Source: Fonticula alba ATCC 38817
Lineage: Eukaryota; Protista; Nucleariida
Reading direction: 5' to 3' (one strand)
Length of the DNA: 7,700 nt
Assembly: GCA_000388065.2 (NCBI GenBank)
Contig: KB932215.1
The notes under the pieces: generated by a model
Told to the model about the DNA's origin: nothing
Databases searched by the model: none
Seen by the model: the letters and a program-made list of their open reading frames with translations, nothing else
In this document: one piece after another, positions 2-7,700 of the stretch
How positions within the stretch are numbered: the first letter of the stretch is position 1
Layout of the letters: every line of letters begins with the position of its first letter
Translations under genes and position numbers: made by a program

Positions 2-3000
2 GCCCGGCAGGCCGCCACACCAGGCGCCCGGTCCGCGGCCGGCGCCGTCCTCGCCCACTCCACCCGGCGGCTCCTGGCCAGCCAGGCCCCGGCCGATCAG
101 CCCGGGCCTGTGTCGGCCGGGCCGCTTGCCGGGCCGGGATCCCACCATGCCGAGGCCATCCAGGCGCTGGACGCCGCGCTGGAGGCCGTCTTCCTGGCCG
201 GCCTGGACACCCGGCATACGCACGCCTGGACCACCTCCGGGCTGACCTCGCGCCCGGCGCGCGTTGTTTGTGCGCCCCCCCCCCGCACCCCCTCCCCGCT
301 GCCCATGCGCGGCCTGTGCGCCCTGCTGCCCTGCCGCTGACCCGGTCGCCTGCCGCCGCCTCCCCGGCCGCCCCTTGTCCCGTGCGCCGCCGCAGTCACC
401 GGGCGCGACGCGGCCCTCACGCGGGCCGTCGCGCGCTCCGCCCTGCTGCCGCTGCTGAGCGCCCCCTCCGGCCCGGGGGGCGCCTTCGCCCTGCCGGACA
501 ACACGCGCGACGTTGTCCGGGCCTGGGCCTCCTCCGACTGGTCGTGCGTGTGGCCCTGCGCCGCCCTGCCCCGCGGCGGGGCTTTGCCCGATCCCGCCTC
601 GCCCCCCTGCCCCGCCCCACGCTGACCCATCGCCCGCTTTCGTCCGGCGCCGGTGCCCGGCCCGCAGCCCGAGCGGCGGTGTCGAGATCCTCCTCACCCC
701 CGGTGCGTGTGCTCCTGGGCCGCCGGCTCTGCCCCCGGTCCACCGGGGTGTCTCGGGCCCCGGCTGTGCCCGGCCCCCGTGGTCGGCCCCGGGCCTCATG
801 CGCGCGACTCACCGCCCCCCCCTCCCCCCCCCCCCCCCCCTTTCTCCCGCCCCTTCCCTGGCTAACCCGGTACAGGCACCACCTGGGACTCGAGCACGGA
901 TGCGGTCCAGCGCCGGGCCATTGCCGAGGCCGATCTGACCGTGGTCGTGGTGCCGCCGCCGCCGCCGGCCGCCTTCCCCCTGGAGCCCGACGCCCCGGGC
1001 CCCGGGGCCGGGGCCCTGGACGCCGCATGGCTCGGGCGCCGCGACGATGTGGCCCTCATCCGGGCGTCGCTCTTCCCGCGCGAGCCGTCGGCCTGGGCCC
1101 CGCCCTCGTCGGTGCCCCTGGTGTCGGACCCGTCGCTGTCGGGGCCGGAGCAGGCGGCGGCGGCGGCCGCACGTGCAGCGGCCGCCGCCGCCACCGGCAG
1201 CGGGCCCGACTGCGATGGCGGCCCCCTCCCCCGGCCGTCGCCGGTGCTGGTGTTCGCCACGCCGCCCGGGCTGTCGGCGCCGCAGCGCCAGGCCATGGCG
1301 CAGCAGGCCTCGCAGGCGGTGCTGAGCCGCGCCGCGGCCGGGGCCTTCTCCCCGGCCCGGTGCTCGGTCAGCCCGGGGGACTCGGCCCAGGCCGGCTCCC
1401 CGGCCGGGCACCAGCACCAGCACCAGCACCCGGTCGATGTGTCCACCTGGCCGTCGTTCGTGGTGGACCCGGCCGACGGCCGCGGCGCCCCGGTCCTGCG
1501 GGACTACCTGCTGGAGATGGCGCGCCAGGAGAAGCGCCACAATCTGCGCATGCGCTCGCTGCTGGATGCCGCCCATGAATGTGCGTTCGGCGCGGGGCCT
1601 CCGCGTGTGCCCTCTTCGGGCGGCGCTTGGTGCTCTCTTGTTTCTCCTGCTGCTGCTGCTGCTGCTGCTGCCGTTGTTGCTGTTGTTGCTGCTGCTGACA
1701 CTGCGGCCGCCCTGCCCTCCGTCCCGCGGCCCGTGCGGCCCTTCAGCCCTGCAAGAGGCCGGCGAGACCCTGCGCCAGCGGGAGGTCGTCACCCGCCAGC
1801 TGTACTACAGCCCGGGGGGCATCCGCGACCGGCTCAAGTCCTCGGGGCTGGGTCTCTTCTCGCTGAGCGAGCAACTGAGCGCCGCCTCGTCGCAAGTCTC
1901 GCGCTACCTCCTGGGCGATGGGGCCGACGCCGGCAGTGGGAAGGAGCTCTCGATCCCGGGCCCGGGCCCGGGCCCGGCCACGGCCGCCTCCGCGTCGGCC
2001 CCCCAGCCGCGCTTCTCCTGGCTGGACCTCTATCGCCGGGTGCATCTGCTTGGCGGGGCCAATCGCCGGAAGATGACGGTCTTCGAGTTCCAGGTGTGGC
2101 AGAAGCTCCAGGCGTCGTTGCATTTCTCCCCGGACTCGGTTCGTGCCCTTGGTGTCTCTTTCTTCCCTGCCGCACGTGCTGACCGGGTGCCTTGCTTGCT
2201 CCGCTGCCGGATGTCGACGCTGCCGGCTGTCCGTGCGGCGGCCCCTTCGCCGGTGGCTCCCCCTCTGTCTGGGCCGCCTTCGCCATTTCCCCGCCATTTC
2301 CCTGCCCTTTTCCTGCCTTTCTCTCTTCCTCTCCGCCCACGCGCACGCATTTGCACACGCACTTCCCTCTCCCCCTCCTCCCTGCGCCACACACACACGC
2401 ACACACACACACACACACGCACACGCACACGCACACGCACACGCACACGCAGCTCGCCCCCGCTACCACCATGATCAACTCCCTGCCGCTGTTCGCCCGG
2501 CTACGCGACGCCCCGGCCGCCGACGCGACACCCCCGGTCCCCGGCCCGGCCGAGCGCATCCTCCACGAGCAGGAGCTCTTCGACATCGTGTCCAGCACCA
2601 TGGACCACCACCTGTCGCCGGAGGCCCTGACCCGGAGCACCCGGCGCAAGCTCATCGTCACGCACCTCGGCTCGCTGGTGCTCTATTCCGCGGCGGCCGG
2701 CGCCCCGCTGACGGTCTGGGGCCAGACCCTGCTGGACCCGAGCGTGGTCATCACCCCCCTGGAGGCGGGCCTGGTGGCCACCGGGTCCGTGGCCCTGTCG
2801 CTCACGAGCTTCCTCTGGCGCCGGTGGATGCTCTCCTCGGCCGCGGCCCGTATTCACAACAAGTGCGGTGCCCTGTCCTCCTTCTCCGACACCACCCTCT
2901 CCAAGATGCTGTCCCTGATCGACGACAAGGTGAACGCCTGGTCCTGCAGCCAGGCCGAGCAGCGGCGCGTCTTCCAGGCCCAGGCGCAGGTCCGCCGCGC

Positions 3001-3037
3001 GGCCGAGGCCCTGGACCCCCACCGGCCGGATGAGTAG
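2..3037 (+). CDS. 5'-truncated 6-exon gene, >=710 aa; putative mitochondrial dynamin-superfamily-like pseudo-GTPase (mitofusin/bacterial DLP-like layout, possibly Mmc1-like) with two C-terminal hydrophobic segments
   Basis: Reconstructed exons: <2-269, 396-543, 668-702, 876-1580, 1747-2138, 2453-3037 (TAG 3035-3037). They total 2133 nt = 711 codons, with all GT-AG phases compatible and GC3-rich codons. Motifs: RVVFTGRDAALTRAVARSALL (G1-like), GVEILLTPG-x17-ADLTVVVV (G3-like), helix LRDYLLEMARQEKRHNLRMRSLLDAAHESLQEAGETL, WLDLYRRV, and hydrophobic LIVTHLGSLVLYSAAAGAPLTVWG and AGLVATGSVALSLTSFLW. Gene structure is well supported; the family call is from remembered alignments only. Confidence 0.7.
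270..395 (+). other. Intron 1 of gene 1
   Basis: GTGCGC donor, GCTGAC branch motif 336-341, CGCAG acceptor; phase 1 restores the frame (VVF-TGR). Confidence 0.8.
544..667 (+). other. Intron 2 of gene 1
   Basis: GTGCGT donor, GCTGAC 621-626, CGCAG acceptor; phase 2 compatible. Confidence 0.75.
703..875 (+). other. Intron 3 of gene 1
   Basis: GTGCGT donor, GCTAAC 861-866, TACAG acceptor; joins LLTP-G-TTWD; contains poly-C 824-840. Confidence 0.8.
1581..1746 (+). other. Intron 4 of gene 1
   Basis: GTGCGT donor, CTGAC 1695-1699, TTCAG acceptor; joins AAHE-S-LQEA into one continuous helix. Confidence 0.85.
1647..1697. repeat. (CTG)8 plus degenerate (TTG/CTG) trinucleotide microsatellite in intron 4
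   Basis: Read directly: (CTG)8 at 1647-1670, then CCG TTG TTG CTG TTG TTG CTG CTG CTG. Confidence 0.95.
2139..2452 (+). other. Intron 5 of gene 1 (314 nt)
   Basis: GTTCGT donor in phase 0 (alternative phase-0 donor at 2094), CTGAC 2179-2183, and the first AG of the intron at 2451-2452; pyrimidine-rich with a CA repeat. Confidence 0.7.
2388..2450. repeat. (CA)n/(CACACG)n microsatellite abutting the 3' splice site of intron 5
   Basis: Read directly from sequence. Confidence 0.95.
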
Positions 3038-3102: not shown

Positions 3103-4018
3103 NNNNNNNNNNNNNNNNNNNNNNNNNNNNNNNNNNNNNNNNNNNNNNNNNNNNNNNNNNNNNNNNNNNNNNNNNNNNNNNNNNNNNNNNNNNNNNNNNN
3201 NNNNNNNNNNNNNNNNNNNNNNNNNNNNNNNNNNNNNNNNNNNNNNNNNNNNNNNNNNNNNNNNNNNNNNNNNNNNNNNNNNNNNNNNNNNNNNNNNNNN
3301 NNNNNNNNNNNNNNNNNNNNNNNNNNNNNNNNNNNNNNNNNNNNNNNNNNNNNNNNNNNNNNNNNNNNNNNNNNNNNNNNNNNNNNNNNNNNNNNNNNNN
3401 NNNNNNNNNNNNNNNNNNNNNNNNNNNNNNNNNNNNNNNNNNNNNNNNNNNNNNNNNNNNNNNNNNNNNNNNNNNNNNNNNNNNNNNNNNNNNNNNNNNN
3501 NNNNNNNNNNNNNNNNNNNNNNNNNNNNNNNNNNNNNNNNNNNNNNNNNNNNNNNNNNNNNNNNNNNNNNNNNNNNNNNNNNNNNNNNNNNNNNNNNNNN
3601 NNNNNNNNNNNNNNNNNNNNNNNNNNNNNNNNNNNNNNNNNNNNNNNNNNNNNNNNNNNNNNNNNNNNNNNNNNNNNNNNNNNNNNNNNNNNNNNNNNNN
3701 NNNNNNNNNNNNNNNNNNNNNNNNNNNNNNNNNNNNNNNNNNNNNNNNNNNNNNNNNNNNNNNNNNNNNNNNNNNNNNNNNNNNNNNNNNNNNNNNNNNN
3801 NNNNNNNNNNNNNNNNNNNNNNNNNNNNNNNNNNNNNNNNNNNNNNNNNNNNNNNNNNNNNNNNNNNNNNNNNNNNNNNNNNNNNNNNNNNNNNNNNNNN
3901 NNNNNNNNNNNNNNNNNNNNNNNNNNNNNNNNNNNNNNNNNNNNNNNNNNNNNNNNNNNNNNNNNNNNNNNNNNNNNNNNNNNNNNNNNNNNNNNNNNNN
4001 NNNNNNNNNNNNNNNNNN
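3103..4018. other. Assembly gap, 916 N
   Basis: Run of N; ORFs spanning it are artefacts. Confidence 1.
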
Positions 4019-4045: not shown

Positions 4046-4676
4046 ACGCTCGATCATGGTCAACCGCGGATGGATCCCCCACGACATGAAGGACCCGAAG
4101 CTCCGGAGCGCCGGCAATCCCACCGGGCCGGTCGATGTGATCGGCATGCTCCGGCACCCGATTCGCGTGCGTGCTTGCGCTGGTTCATTGCCCCGCCCTT
4201 GCCCGGGGTCGAGCCGCACTGACCTTCGCCCTGCTGGCTGTGCCCTTCGCCTTTATCCGCCTGCCCCCCCTCCCCGTCTCCTGGCGCCCGGCCCTGCAGC
4301 CGTCCTCCTTCACGCCGGACAATGTCCCCGAAAAGGGCCAGTGGCACTGGATCGATGTCGGGCAGCTGGCTGACACGCTCCGGGCCGATCCCATCGTCAT
4401 TGATGTCACTGGTGCGCGCCCGCCCCGGGCCCCCTCCCTGGTCCTCTCTCGCCCCGCCCCCATTGCACTCACCTGCGTGGTCTCTCTCTCTCTCTCTCTC
4501 TCTCTCCCTCTCCCTTGATCCCTTGCTCGCACACACGGTGCACAGACGCCAACTTCCCCGGCGGTCTGCCCATGGCCGACCAGACCACCGCCAACATCCG
4601 GAATAACCACCTCAGCTACGCGGTGACCTGGTACATGCTCAGCGCCTCCACCGCGGCCATGATCTTCCTCCTTTGA
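4046..4676 (+). CDS. SURF1: SURF1/SHY1 family cytochrome c oxidase assembly protein, exons 2-4 (C-terminal half)
   Basis: Exons 4046-4166 (RSIMVNRGWIP...GPVDVIGMLRHPIR), 4300-4411 (PSSFTPDNVPEKGQWHWIDV...) and 4546-4676 (DANFPGGLPMADQTTANIRNNHLSYAVTWYMLSASTAAMIFLL*, TGA 4674-4676). VNRGW, FTPDN-P-x2-G-W-W-D and RNNHLxYxxTWY are hallmark SURF1 motifs. Introns 4167-4299 and 4412-4545 are GTGCGY...CAG and in phase. Confidence 0.95.
4481..4506. repeat. (TC)13 microsatellite in a SURF1 intron
   Basis: Read directly from sequence. Confidence 0.95.
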
Positions 4677-5123
4677 GGGCCGGCCACCCGGCTTCTGGCT
4701 GGTTTTTATGTACCTCGCCCCCCCCCCCCCCCCCCTCCTGAACGCCCCTCCCCGCCTCTCGACCAGGAGGCGCGGGCCTCCGTCCGCGGCGCGCCGACAG
4801 ACGAGCCACTGGCAGGCCGCGAGGCAGAGGCCCGGCTCGGCTCGGCTCGAAGAGCGGGCGGGGCCGGGGGCAGGCACACGCCGCCGGCATATGGCGGCCA
4901 CCGATGGAGACCAAATACACGCCCAAATCGAACACGACGAGGACCACCTGCCGACGCTTGCGGCCGCCACGATCGGGGCTGATCACATGGGCGCCGGCTG
5001 GCGCTGGTCTCTGGCCCACAACAGCCGAGCCGCCCCTTGTCCTTGCGCATGTCCCCCCGGCCCCCGGCCCCCGGCCCCCGAGTGTGTGCATGCATGCCCG
5101 GGCGCGGACGCGGCCGCCGGCGG

Positions 5124-5202: not shown

Positions 5203-5225
5203 GGGGGGGGGGGGGGGGGGGGGGG
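5203..5225. repeat. Poly-G (23 nt) in the SURF1-LTN1 intergenic region
   Basis: Read directly. Other C/G homopolymers lie at 824-840, 4718-4735, 7196-7211 and 7688-7700. Confidence 0.95.
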
Positions 5226-5572: not shown

Positions 5573-6525
5573 ATGTCCAAGAAGGGCAAGGGCCTCCGTA
5601 ATAAGGACTCCGCCAGCAGCAGGTGCGCCCCTGCCGCCGGGCCCGCGGCGTCAGCCCGGCGCCTGTCTCCCCTATGCCACCGGCCAACTGACCGGCTTCT
5701 TTTTGCGCCCCCCGCCCCGCCCCGCCCCGCCCCGCCCCGCCCCGGACAACCCACCAACCCCCGGCGCCGGCCCGGCACCACCCCAGCAATGCCTCCTTCC
5801 TGCTGGAGCGGACCGGCGTCTCGGCGCAGGCCGGCTTCGCCCTGTTCGGGGAGTTCACCGCGGCCGCCTACGACCTGGACCACAATGTGAATGTCCTGCT
5901 GAAGAAGCTCTCCAAGAAGAGCGAGATCACCCGGGCCAAGGCGCTGGAGGAGCTGCTGGAGGCCCTGGCCGCCATGGACTCGGAGGAGGTCGGCAAGCTG
6001 GCCCTGCGCTGGGCTTCGGACACCTTCGCCCGGGTCCGCGCGGACCCGGTCCCGCGGGTGCGCATCCTCGGCATGCAGATTCACGGGCGCCTGTGCCAGC
6101 GCCTGGGGCGCGCGGTGCAGGCCCATGTCCCGGCCCTGTCCGGGGCCTGGGTGGCCGCGCAGTTCGACACCTCCAAGGAGGTGGCCGCCGAGACGCGCGC
6201 CGGCCTGGCCGCGCTCTTCACCCCGGTGCAGTTCGAGCGCCTGGTCCGCCACTGCCAGCCGGACATCCTGGCCCGTGCCAGTGACATCATTCTCAGCGAG
6301 GATCCGACGCAGTTCTGTGCGTGGGCCGGCGCCCCTCGCCCTTCACCCTGCCTGCCCGCTCGATTTTTTCTGCCCCCCCGCCGGCGCAAGCGCCCCCTGC
6401 TGACACGCTGGCCCGCGCGCCGATCCCGGCCCCAGGCGACCCGAAGGTCTTTGACGAGCACGAAATCCGCTCGGTCTTCGAGCGGCTCCAGGTGGAGTCC
6501 CTGCTGGGCCTGTGCTCGCTTGTCG
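5573..6525 (+). CDS. LTN1: E3 ubiquitin ligase listerin (LTN1/Rkr1), N-terminal HEAT domain; 3'-truncated (~223 codons visible)
   Basis: ATG 5573 in CACCACCATG context. Exons 5573-5622, 5787-6316 and 6436-6525 give MSKKGKGLRNKDSASSSNASF...LLKKLSKKSEITRAKALEEL...FARVRADPVPRVR...HVPALSGAWVAAQFDTSKEVAAET...CDPKVFDEHEIRSVFERLQVESLLGL. This matches the listerin N-terminal signature (LRKLSKKD-xxTK-xKA; D..RRVR; W..AQ.D). The donor at 6526 has no credible downstream exon before the gap. Confidence 0.9.
5710..5744. repeat. (CCCCG)7 pentanucleotide repeat in LTN1 intron 1
   Basis: Read directly from sequence. Confidence 0.95.
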
Positions 6526-6777: not shown

Positions 6778-6787
6778 NNNNNNNNNN
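6778..6787. other. Assembly gap, 10 N (probably a placeholder size)
   Basis: Run of N separating an unfinished LTN1 intron from the SURF1 upstream region. Confidence 1.
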
Positions 6788-7056: not shown

Positions 7057-7231
7057 GCGACCTTCGCGCCATGTTTTTTTCACATCCGGCGCACCTGCTC
7101 CGGGGGGGGGGGGCATGCACGCCGGCCGAACACGTTCAAGGGCCGCGATCCGGCCCGGCGGCCGTTGTGGCTGCCCAGACTCCCCCCGCCCTCCTCCCCC
7201 CCCCCCCCCCCGCCCCGCTCGCTCGCCCGCC

Positions 7232-7605
7232 ATGTCCTTCTTCCGTTCGCAGAAGGCCGTCTTCGCGGCGGTCCCGCTGGCCACCTTCGCCCTGGGCACC
7301 TGGCAGGTTCGCCGGCTCCAGTGGAAGACGGACCTCCTGCAGAAGATCGAAGACCGCCGGTCGGAGGACCCGATTGCCGTGGCCAGCACCGACGCGGCGC
7401 TGGACCACCTGCTGGCCCGGTCGACGGCCACCCAGTCCAGCGAGGTGGTCGACCGGGTGGTCAACGAGTCGGACGATGGGCTGGAATTTCGCCGGCTGCG
7501 CTTCCGCGGGGTCTTCGACCATGGGCGCGAGATCTTCGTCGGGCCGCGCACCAACGACGGCAACGCCGGCTTCCATGTTGTCACGCCGCTGGTCCTGGAG
7601 AATGG
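7232..7605 (+). CDS. SURF1: SURF1/SHY1 exon 1 (N-terminal half), located downstream of exons 2-4
   Basis: CGCCATG start; MSFFRSQKAVFAAVPLATFALGTWQVRRLQWKTDLLQKIEDR...EFRRLRFRGVFDHGREIFVGPRTNDGNAGFHVVTPLVLENG. LGTWQVxRLxWK, EFRR...G.FDH and G..V.TPL are SURF1 motifs. Phase-2 donor GTGCGC at 7606. Confidence 0.95.
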
Positions 7606-7700
7606 GTGCGCTCGCTGTCTGCCGCCGTCGCCGTATCCATGCGCCGCCCCCGTGGGTGTGGTGTGCTCGCTCGCCTCCTCTTGTTCACCCCCCCCCCCCC

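What the first reader, a model, noticed from the sequence alone, without database searches (positions are those of the whole stretch)
2..3037. Candidate catalytically dead dynamin/mitofusin-like protein (Mmc1-like pseudo-GTPase) hidden by introns
Seen: after splicing, the protein has an Arg/Ala/Ser/Leu-rich, acid-free N-terminal stretch (ARSAAGAVLAHSTRRLLASQ). It is followed by RVVFTGRDAALTRAVARSALL, GVEILLTPG-TTWDSSTDAVQRRAIAE-ADLTVVVV, a strand PVLVFATPPG, a strand FVVDP, a long amphipathic helix, and two C-terminal hydrophobic segments ending in a helix. Established (recalled, not looked up): mitofusins and bacterial DLPs have G1 like VAFFGRTSNGKSTVINAML, G3 like LVLMDSPG-x17-ADVFVLV, G4 NRWD/NKxD, then a helical stalk and a transmembrane hairpin. 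Here the order and the 17-residue G3-to-AD spacing are kept, but the P-loop GKS/T is LTR, the G3 Asp is Leu and G4 is absent. Inference: a nucleotide-dead, mitochondria-targeted dynamin-superfamily scaffold. The WLDLYRRV and EAGLVATG...LWRRW motifs recall fungal Mmc1-type proteins (fission-yeast Mmc1 is described as a MICOS-associated dynamin-like pseudoenzyme). If the host is non-fungal, this would extend that class.
Basis: partly seen in the sequence, partly recalled or inferred. Interest (0 to 1): 0.75.

Follow-up and report, generated by a model that had tools for sequence, protein, structure and literature searches.

The report
Dead dynamin-like mitochondrial protein in Fonticula
A transcribed six-exon gene of the amoeba Fonticula alba, a sister lineage of the fungi, encodes a protein with no sequence relatives. 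It looks like a bacterial or mitofusin-type dynamin that has lost its GTP-binding motifs and has the layout of the fungal cristae scaffold Mmc1, but kinship with Mmc1 could not be tested here.

Summary
Window 2-3037 (+) carries a six-exon gene. Spliced transcript contigs from four public runs confirm four of its five GT..AG introns as joints and the fifth through contig pieces.

The organism is Fonticula alba and the public model is H696_05899, a 603-aa hypothetical protein. That model starts falsely inside intron 1, so it lacks exon 1 and half of exon 2, including the P-loop-equivalent stretch.

The protein is a sequence orphan in Pfam, PDB, an exhaustive search with exon 6, three word searches, metagenomes and its own genome. 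No exon holds a P-loop or an NKxD motif.

Two kinds of weak evidence point to a dynamin-like G domain:
- The ESM Atlas features and its own model hit only dynamin, mitofusin or GTPase clusters.
- Two independent bacterial dynamin-like profiles place their best local match on the predicted G3-to-beta4 block (0/1000 and 6/1000 shuffles). One profile also hits the G5/alpha5 block.

hhalign and whole-protein scores are not significant, and the AlphaFold2 model is unusable.

The layout matches Mmc1: a presequence-like N-terminus, a helical middle, two C-terminal hydrophobic segments and a terminal helix. Homology to Mmc1 itself could not be tested.

Verdict: a probable new member of a known kind, of moderate interest.

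The parts
2..269 (+). Exon 1 (5' end not readable). It holds an Arg/Ala/Ser-rich stretch with no acidic residue in its first 31 readable residues (presequence-like), a Pro/Gly linker, a helix-like stretch, and the start of the beta1-like strand (ARVV).
   Evidence: Frame-2 translation; transcript contigs cover 2-269 and join to 396; composition.
270..395 (+). Intron 1 (GTGCGC...CAG). The public model H696_05899 starts at an ATG inside it (305-307).
   Evidence: Joint 269>396 in all four runs; P0001 begins MRGL, then mid-exon 2.
396..543 (+). Exon 2. It holds the P-loop-equivalent region without GK[ST] (F/TGRDAALTRAVARSALL) and then the start of the block resembling the DLP 'PENRKGV' segment (PDNTRDVV).
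668..702 (+). Exon 3 (35 nt). It holds the beta3-like strand and the degenerate G3 motif (GVEILLTPG, with Leu in place of the G3 Asp).
   Evidence: Joints 543>668 and 701/702>875/876; HMM alignment to VDTPG.
494..967 (+). The G3-to-beta4 block, spliced across introns 2 and 3. It corresponds to P0001 residues 16-74 and is the best local match of the bacterial DLP G-domain profiles.
   Evidence: Second-phylum profile: 4.1 bits, 0/1000 shuffles. Acidobacteriota profile: 6/1000. Combined profile: 0/1000. Among 172 Fonticula decoy frames, for the second-phylum profile only true GTPase exons score higher.
876..1580 (+). Exon 4. In order: alpha2/beta4-like (ADLTVVVV), a low-complexity insert of about 100 aa (poly-Pro, poly-Ala), beta5-like PVLVFATPPG with no NKxD, a second insert (HQHQHQH), beta6-like FVVDP, and the start of a long helix.
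   Evidence: (helix 247-298 in the model, low confidence).
1478..1784 (+). The G5/alpha5-to-stalk block (P0001 residues 245-291, across intron 4). It matches DLP profile positions 250-302, directly after the profile's G5 strand.
   Evidence: Profile 1: 5.6 bits, 0/1000 shuffles and 0/172 decoys. Combined profile: 1/1000. Profile 2: not replicated, 85/1000.
1747..2138 (+). Exon 5: helical middle (stalk-like) region with a GPGPGP linker and the WLDLYRRV stretch.
2453..3037 (+). Exon 6 with the stop codon at 3035-3037.
   Evidence: 100% match to P0001 residues 410-603.
2648..2722 (+). First hydrophobic segment (candidate transmembrane helix 1).
   Evidence: Kyte-Doolittle 19-residue windows of 1.2-1.4.
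2738..2815 (+). Second hydrophobic segment (candidate transmembrane helix 2), separated from the first by about 5 residues.
   Evidence: Kyte-Doolittle windows of 1.25-1.54.
2816..3034 (+). C-terminal helical tail of about 73 aa after the hairpin.
   Evidence: The only part of the AlphaFold2 model with pLDDT of about 70 (residues 555-595).

Best explanation
The gene (Fonticula alba H696_05899, with a corrected 5' part) is transcribed and spliced. It encodes a protein of about 720 aa or more that is a degenerate descendant of a bacterial or mitofusin-type dynamin-like protein (DLP). The strands and helices of the G domain are still recognisable in the canonical order: beta1/alpha1, then the 'PENRKGV...VDTPG'-like block, 17 residues, the 'AD + beta4' strand, beta5, beta6, and a long helix into a stalk. 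The residues that bind and hydrolyse GTP are gone: there is no GK[S/T], Leu replaces the G3 Asp, and there is no NKxD. Two long low-complexity inserts have been added. A helical middle region, a hydrophobic hairpin with a very short loop and a terminal helix follow, and the readable N-terminus resembles a mitochondrial presequence. Inferred mechanism, not shown: the protein is imported into mitochondria and anchored in the inner membrane by the hairpin, with its bulk in the matrix. It would self-assemble as a static, nucleotide-independent scaffold that stabilises cristae beside MICOS, as described for S. pombe Mmc1. It is most likely the Fonticula counterpart, and probably the orthologue, of fungal Mmc1. 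That would place the origin of this pseudo-enzyme before the split between Fonticula and the fungi.
For: The gene and its junctions are shown by spliced transcript contigs. The organism and the public model come, and the 5' error of that model. P-loop and NKxD are absent from every exon. The ESM Atlas gives a best feature hit of 0.91. All ten best hits that carry a Pfam family are Dynamin_N, MMR_HSR1 or GTP_EFTU, and a Fzo_mitofusin cluster scores 0.89. The Atlas's own model matches a G-domain cluster (TM 0.66 by target, residues 14-273) and a 'dynamin family protein' cluster (212 residues aligned, residues 1-320). Two DLP profiles built from independent sets of bacterial genomes both put their best local alignment on P0001 residues 16/33-72/74. 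The scores were 0/1000, 6/1000 and 0/1000 shuffles, and hhalign picks the same region (P 0.024). A collinear second block sits directly after the G5-like strand (0/1000 shuffles, 0/172 natural decoys). For the second-phylum profile, only true Fonticula GTPase exons outscore the protein among 172 same-genome decoy frames. The layout matches the criteria used for Mmc1 candidates: mitochondrial presequence, two C-terminal transmembrane segments and no Pfam domain (PMC10592917). Other mitochondrial dynamics and MICOS-linked proteins (Ugo1, Aim24) are already known to be shared by fungi and Fonticula (PMC4802753).
Against: No statistically solid homology was found. Whole-protein HMM scores are marginal for profile 1 (E 0.0038 for one target) and not significant for profile 2, where the reversed sequence scores higher. 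hhalign probabilities are 1-2%. The G1 region and the C-terminal half show nothing significant. The G5 block is not replicated by profile 2. About 15 sub-profile tests were run, and shuffles do not keep helical periodicity. The ESM feature scores (0.90-0.91, 164-168 shared features) lie in a range that 4-10% of shuffled proteins reach. AlphaFold2 without an alignment gave pLDDT 40. No link to Mmc1 itself was tested. Exon 6, which holds the hairpin, has no relative among 1.84 billion representatives. The start codon and true N-terminus are unknown, so targeting is an inference. Mic10, Mic60 and Mic26 Pfam models found nothing in a six-frame search of the genome, though that search is weak for an intron-rich genome.
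Confidence: 0.5

Rival explanations
1. A lineage-specific orphan membrane protein with no evolutionary relation to dynamin-like proteins. On this reading the motif order and the weak profile matches are chance or composition effects in an Ala/Arg/Leu/Pro-rich protein from a genome of about 73% GC (measured on this window).
For: Only the protein itself was found in all sequence searches. There is no Pfam hit. hhalign probability is 1-2%. Profile 2's whole-protein score is not significant and the reversed sequence scores higher. The AlphaFold2 model is unconfident. The ESM scores lie in a range that shuffled proteins sometimes reach.
Against: The a priori predicted family (dynamin/mitofusin) is exactly what the ESM features and structure return. 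Two independent profiles choose the same pre-specified block with 0-6 of 1000 shuffles reaching the score. For the second-phylum profile, only genuine GTPase exons beat it among same-composition decoys. The two blocks are collinear with the G-domain order.
Confidence: 0.28
2. A degenerate dynamin-like protein that is not an Mmc1 orthologue. It would be either a decayed mitofusin/Fzo1 of the outer membrane, which has the same hairpin plus C-terminal helix layout, or an independently inactivated bacterial-type matrix DLP of the MfnL kind.
For: The detectable similarity is to bacterial DLP profiles and, by ESM, to mitofusin and to Verrucomicrobiota and Planctomycetota DLP clusters. The six-frame search with Dynamin_N found two dynamins, an EHD and an Era-like gene in Fonticula but no canonical mitofusin G domain, and Fzo_mitofusin found nothing. 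No Mmc1 comparison was possible.
Against: The readable N-terminus is presequence-like, which does not fit an outer-membrane mitofusin. A GTP-dead sole mitofusin could not drive fusion. MfnL-type proteins are reported absent from opisthokonts (bioRxiv 10.1101/2023.06.28.546890). Mmc1 is reported as ancestral to most fungi, the sister group of Fonticula (PMC10592917). Absence of Fzo1 in a six-frame search with masked stretches is weak evidence.
Confidence: 0.17
3. An active GTPase with an unorthodox nucleotide-binding site.
For: None beyond the G-domain-like order of elements.
Against: No Walker A Lys/Ser, no G3 Asp and no NKxD anywhere in the six exons.
Confidence: 0.03

Closest known systems
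Mmc1 (Mug99) of Schizosaccharomyces pombe and its fungal orthologues (Kumar et al., PMC10592917; Curr Biol 2024)
   Same: Both have an N-terminal presequence-like region, a DRP-like order of elements without the GTP-binding residues, and no Pfam domain. [quoted passage not shown] Both are single-copy. The host is the sister lineage of Fungi.
   Different: The Fonticula protein is longer (about 720 aa or more against 526) because of two low-complexity inserts. Its localisation, self-assembly and MICOS association are unknown. The published survey covered only Mycocosm fungal proteomes.
Bacterial dynamin-like proteins (BDLP, IniA, LeoA, DynA type; Pfam Dynamin_N PF00350)
   Same: The overall length is 550-700 aa. 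The blocks 'PENRKGV...VDTPG...AD + beta4' and 'G5 strand + G..Le..L helix' are collinear, and a hydrophobic paddle or hairpin lies towards the C-terminus.
   Different: The bacterial proteins have intact G1-G4 motifs and reach the Pfam threshold. The Fonticula protein has none of the motifs, no Pfam hit even at E 10, large inserts and a presequence-like N-terminus.
Mitofusin / Fzo1
   Same: The G3-to-beta4 spacing of 17 residues followed by 'AD' and a hydrophobic strand (the mitofusin spacing is recalled from memory, not tested). Both have a hairpin of two hydrophobic segments followed by a C-terminal helix. An ESM feature hit to a Fzo_mitofusin cluster scores 0.89.
   Different: Mitofusins are active GTPases of the outer membrane without a presequence. 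Neither the Fzo_mitofusin nor the Dynamin_N profile matches this gene.
TbMfnL / DBF family (matrix-facing dynamin-superfamily protein of trypanosomes and other non-opisthokonts; bioRxiv 10.1101/2023.06.28.546890)
   Same: A presequence plus C-terminal membrane anchor, bacterial-type DLP relatives, and a proposed matrix-side action on the inner membrane.
   Different: MfnL has a canonical, required GTPase domain and is reported absent from opisthokonts.

Membership tests
Mmc1 family (criteria of PMC10592917) | Hit by the profile built from SpMmc1 (iterative jackhmmer over fungal proteomes) | not testable with these tools
   No Mmc1 sequence or profile could be obtained by reference. The paper's supplements are not held. 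Exhaustive phmmer with exon 6 and the word searches returned only the protein itself.
Mmc1 family (criteria of PMC10592917) | Predicted mitochondrial targeting sequence at the N-terminus | tested here: inconclusive
   The first 31 readable residues hold 4 Arg and no Asp or Glu and are Ala/Ser/Leu-rich (chance about 0.05). The true N-terminus, at least 8-9 more codons, is not readable. No targeting predictor was available.
Mmc1 family (criteria of PMC10592917) | [quoted passage not shown] | tested here: met
   Exon 6 residues 66-90 and 96-121, Kyte-Doolittle 1.2-1.5, loop of about 5 residues. This rests on hydropathy only, not a dedicated predictor.
Mmc1 family (criteria of PMC10592917) | No other identifiable Pfam domain | tested here: met
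   Exon-by-exon scan and whole P0001 scan: nothing below E 0.06.
Mmc1 family (criteria of PMC10592917) | DRP-like fold by remote homology and structure prediction | tested here: inconclusive
   ESM Atlas features and its own model point to dynamin or G-domain clusters. Local DLP-profile matches are at p of about 0.001-0.006. But hhalign probability is 1-2% and the AlphaFold2 model has pLDDT 40.
Mmc1 family (criteria of PMC10592917) | Self-association, inner-membrane and matrix topology, enrichment next to MICOS | not testable with these tools
   These need experiments. Six-frame Pfam searches for Mic10, Mitofilin and ApoO in the genome found nothing, but they are weak for an intron-rich, partly masked genome.
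Dynamin superfamily GTPases (Dynamin_N, PF00350) | G1 P-loop GxxxxGK[ST] | tested here: not met
   Regular-expression scan of all six exon translations found none.
Dynamin superfamily GTPases (Dynamin_N, PF00350) | G3 DxxG after beta3 and G4 [NT]KxD after beta5 | tested here: not met
   The position aligned to VDTPG reads LLTPG. No [NT]KxD occurs anywhere.
Dynamin superfamily GTPases (Dynamin_N, PF00350) | Match to the family profile above the curated cut-off | tested here: not met
   No Dynamin_N hit for the exons or for P0001 at E up to 10. The genome-wide Dynamin_N search does not ring at this locus.

The most novel reading that the evidence does not exclude
The Fonticula protein is the deepest-branching Mmc1 orthologue and still keeps recognisable bacterial-DLP sequence blocks ('PENRKGV...DTPG'-like and the post-G5 helix). 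If so, it would tie the fungal pseudo-enzyme Mmc1 to a matrix-facing, bacterial-type DLP ancestor (MfnL/BDLP-like) that opisthokonts were thought to have lost. It would date the loss of GTPase activity to before the Fonticula-fungi split.
Probability: 0.15. Interest if true: 0.65.

Novelty: new member of a known kind. Interest (0 to 1): 0.4.

Why it matters
Mmc1 is so far described only in fungi, as a GTP-dead dynamin-like scaffold that supports cristae beside MICOS. A counterpart in Fonticula alba would move its origin to the base of Holomycota, as is already reported for Ugo1 and Aim24. It would also supply a very divergent sequence for asking which features of such pseudo-enzymes are really conserved, such as the hairpin, the terminal helix and the G-domain core strands. 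On the practical side, the public gene model H696_05899 is wrong at its 5' end. It omits exactly the exons that carry the presequence-like region and the P-loop-equivalent stretch, so proteome-based surveys would misjudge this protein.

Tried and rejected
- **Pfam:** scanned each exon and P0001; nothing found. The Rubrerythrin hit at E 0.06 is noise on a helix.
- **Word searches:** run with exon 6, with P0001 and with P0001 residues 225-345; each returned only the protein itself.
- **Exhaustive phmmer with exon 6 against 1.84 billion representatives:** only the protein itself plus a repetitive false hit, P0002.
- **PDB phmmer:** nothing.
- **ESM Atlas with exon 5 alone:** scores up to 0.84, uninformative.
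- **Metagenome and prokaryote genome scans with P0001:** no relatives.
- **Paralogue search in the own genome:** none.
- **AlphaFold2 of P0001 without an alignment:** pLDDT 40, so no fold search was run on it, because matches would be meaningless. The second structure job was not used. No unbiased alignment exists, and an alignment padded with bacterial DLPs would only return the DLP fold.
- **Weak or negative profile results:** the G1, G4 and C-terminal sub-profiles and the whole-protein score for profile 2 were not significant.
- **Upstream and downstream sequence:** reads N, either an assembly gap or withheld, so I could not tell which. The start codon could not be found.
- **Mmc1 paper:** supplements and the published version are not held.
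- the full spliced model (E1-E6) was never joined, searched or folded. Exons were searched by reference, and the public protein P0001 (mid-E2 to E6) stood in for the rest. As a result the beta1/P-loop-equivalent stretch across the E1/E2 junction was never tested as one piece.
- **Complex prediction for self-association:** not run, because no binding claim is made.
Full report
**What is there.** The window is about 73% G+C and carries spliceosomal introns of the fungal type (GTGCGY...CTRAC...CAG). Reading the three forward frames gives a six-exon model on the + strand:
- E1 2-269
- E2 396-543
- E3 668-702
- E4 876-1580
- E5 1747-2138
- E6 2453-3037, with the stop at 3035-3037

The window lies at G000:C15:93652-101351 of a 31.3-Mb assembly.

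The word search with the public protein names the organism. P0001 is 'hypothetical protein H696_05899 [Fonticula alba]', 603 aa. Fonticula alba is not a fungus. It belongs to the amoeboid sister lineage of Fungi within Holomycota, which is established knowledge and is also stated in PMC4802753.

**Transcript evidence.** Four public runs of 2012 hold 59-63% of the sampled words of the stretch. Laid on the window, their contigs are spliced.
- Joints 269>396, 543>668, 701/702>875/876 and 1580>1747 are all GT..AG.
- Pieces 1747-2138 and 2458-3037 are separated by 5 contig letters, which equals the acceptor at 2452/2453.
- Intron bins have zero depth.
- One contig of 2194 nt spans window 10 to 3037 plus 69 nt of 3' UTR.

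The public model is wrong at its 5' end. P0001 begins MRGL, from an ATG at 305 inside intron 1, and joins at 460 in the middle of exon 2. The transcripts instead join 269 to 396. P0001 therefore lacks exon 1 and the first 21 full codons of exon 2, plus the codon split across the E1/E2 junction. That is the presequence-like region and the stretch equivalent to beta1, the P-loop and alpha1.

The start codon cannot be read. Exon 1 has no in-frame Met, the bases upstream read N, and the contigs extend only 24-27 nt further. The flanks on both sides of the window read N right up to its edges. I cannot tell assembly gaps from withheld sequence.

**Sequence searches.** The protein is an orphan by every sequence search available.
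- No Pfam family for any exon or for P0001.
- Nothing in the PDB.
- Only itself in an exhaustive phmmer of exon 6 against 1.84 billion representatives.
- Only itself in three word searches.
- Nothing in metagenomes or in prokaryote genomes.
- No paralogue in its own genome.

Exons were used by reference, and P0001 stood in for mid-E2 to E6.

**Is it a dead dynamin-like protein?** Shown directly: no exon contains GxxxxGK[ST], GK[ST] or [NT]KxD. Two kinds of independent but weak evidence favour a G-domain origin.

(a) *ESM Atlas.*
- The best feature hits for P0001 are 0.91 and 0.90.
- All ten best hits that carry a Pfam family are Dynamin_N, MMR_HSR1 or GTP_EFTU clusters.
- One of these is an Ascomycota cluster of about 600 aa.
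- A Fzo_mitofusin cluster scores 0.89.
- Several bacterial DLP clusters are also among the hits.
- The Atlas's own model (pLDDT 0.57) aligns to a G-domain cluster (TM 0.66 by target, residues 14-273).
- The same model aligns to a 'dynamin family protein' cluster (212 residues aligned, residues 1-320).

The tool's own calibration says such scores are leads: 4-10% of shuffled proteins reach 0.9.

(b) *Bacterial DLP profiles.* I built two profiles from independent genome samples:
- 19 ORFs of 550-700 aa from the phylum of G002, an Acidobacteriota MAG.
- 9 ORFs from the phylum of G001, an actinomycete MAG.

With all filters off and one target, the G-domain part of each profile places its best local alignment on the same stretch of P0001, residues 16/33-72/74. 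There PDNTRDVV...GVEILLTPG, then 17 residues, then ADLTVVVV aligns to the DLP consensus PENRKGV...GV.LVDTPG...ADAA.FVV.
- Second-phylum profile: 4.1 bits, reached by 0 of 1000 shuffles.
- Acidobacteriota profile: reached by 6 of 1000 shuffles.
- Combined profile: 4.3 bits, reached by 0 of 1000 shuffles.
- hhalign picks the same region (P 0.024).

A second, collinear block covers P0001 residues 245-291. It starts just after FVVDP and aligns to profile positions 250-302, just after the profile's G5 strand. It scores 5.6 bits, reached by 0 of 1000 shuffles and 0 of 172 natural decoys, and by 1 of 1000 shuffles with the combined profile.

The decoys were 172 stop-to-stop frames of at least 120 aa from Fonticula DNA, so they share the protein's composition. 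For the second-phylum profile, the only decoys scoring above the G3 block are exons of true GTPases: the two dynamins, an EHD and an Era-like gene.

**Limits of that evidence.**
- The G5 block is not replicated by the second profile (85 of 1000 shuffles).
- The second profile's whole-protein score is not significant, and the reversed sequence beats it.
- The G1 sub-profile finds nothing in exon 1 or exon 2, and the G4 and C-terminal sub-profiles find nothing significant.
- hhalign probabilities are 1-2%.
- About 15 sub-profile tests were run.
- Shuffling destroys helical periodicity.
- AlphaFold2 without an alignment gave pLDDT 40, so no fold search was justified.

I therefore rate 'derived from a dynamin-like G domain and nucleotide-dead' as likely, about 0.65-0.7, but not shown.

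**Layout and the Mmc1 question.** Mmc1 (PMC10592917) is a 526-aa S. pombe inner-membrane protein. It has a presequence and two consecutive C-terminal transmembrane segments with fewer than 5 residues exposed to the intermembrane space. It has no Pfam domain, a DRP-like fold by HHpred and AlphaFold, and none of the GTP-binding residues. It self-assembles beside MICOS and is widespread in fungi. The survey behind it covered only Mycocosm fungal proteomes.

The Fonticula protein meets the checkable criteria:
- No Pfam domain.
- Two hydrophobic segments about 5 residues apart near the C-terminus, then a helical tail.
- Missing GTP motifs.
- A readable N-terminus with 4 Arg and no acidic residue in 31 positions (chance about 0.05).

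The defining test, similarity to the Mmc1 profile, could not be run. No Mmc1 sequence was reachable by reference, and the supplements and the published version are not held. Ugo1 and Aim24, also linked to mitochondrial dynamics or MICOS, are reported as shared by fungi and Fonticula (PMC4802753). A holomycotan origin for Mmc1 would therefore be unsurprising. No paper in the library links Mmc1 with Fonticula.

**Rivals.**
1. A true orphan with chance resemblance (0.28).
2. A decayed DLP that is not Mmc1, either a degenerate mitofusin/Fzo1 or an independently inactivated MfnL/BDLP-type protein (0.17). The six-frame Dynamin_N and Fzo_mitofusin searches found no canonical mitofusin in the readable genome, which keeps the mitofusin idea alive. 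The presequence-like N-terminus argues against it. MfnL-type proteins are reported absent from opisthokonts (10.1101/2023.06.28.546890).
3. An unorthodox active GTPase (0.03).

MICOS subunits were not detected by six-frame Pfam searches. This is inconclusive for short, intron-split genes in a partly masked genome.

**Verdict.** A GTP-dead dynamin-like protein with Mmc1-like architecture in a non-fungal holomycotan is the best reading (0.5 for the whole statement). Homology to Mmc1 is untested and the fold is not demonstrated. If true, it is a new member of a known kind that extends Mmc1-type pseudo-enzymes beyond Fungi, which is of moderate interest.

Noticed in passing
window 270-543 (ATG at 305-307; false exon junction 315/460): The public gene model H696_05899 (P0001) starts at an ATG inside intron 1 and splices into the middle of exon 2. 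Transcript contigs instead join 269 to 396. The model therefore lacks the true N-terminal part of about 113 aa or more.
   Followed up: yes
window 4056-4673 and 7232-7606 (+): The C-terminal half of a SURF1/Shy1 gene (Pfam SURF1 positions 97-127 and 180-205) lies about 3 kb upstream of the N-terminal half (positions 2-91) on the same strand. N runs sit at 3103-4018 and 6778-6787, next to the pieces. This looks like two scaffold pieces placed in the wrong order, or two partial copies. The sequence after the window reads N, so it could not be settled.
   Followed up: partly
window 5573-6520 (+): The N-terminal exons of a listerin (Ltn1) E3 ligase gene (Pfam Ltn1_1st, E 3e-12) lie between the two SURF1 pieces and run into the 10-N gap region.
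   Followed up: partly
G000: C6:1090295-1091176, C32:6570-7368, C1:2998769-2999339, C3:1617322-1617432: A six-frame Dynamin_N search of the Fonticula genome finds two dynamins, an EHD-type protein and an Era-like GTPase. It finds no canonical mitofusin/Fzo1 G domain, and the Fzo_mitofusin profile finds nothing, although Ugo1 is reported for Fonticula. Fzo1 may lie in masked sequence or be very divergent.
   Followed up: partly
G000 whole genome: The Pfam models for Mic10 (PF04418), Mitofilin/Mic60 (PF09731) and ApoO/Mic26 (PF09769) give no six-frame match. This probably reflects poor sensitivity on short intron-split exons rather than true absence.
   Followed up: no
window 807-853, 4726-4741, 5208-5225, 7194-7211, 7691-7700 and others: Long homopolymer C or G runs flank the N runs and lie in introns and intergenic DNA. 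A (CA)n/(CACG)n microsatellite fills the 3' part of intron 5 (2389-2450) and a (CTG)n run lies in intron 4 (1640-1697).
   Followed up: no
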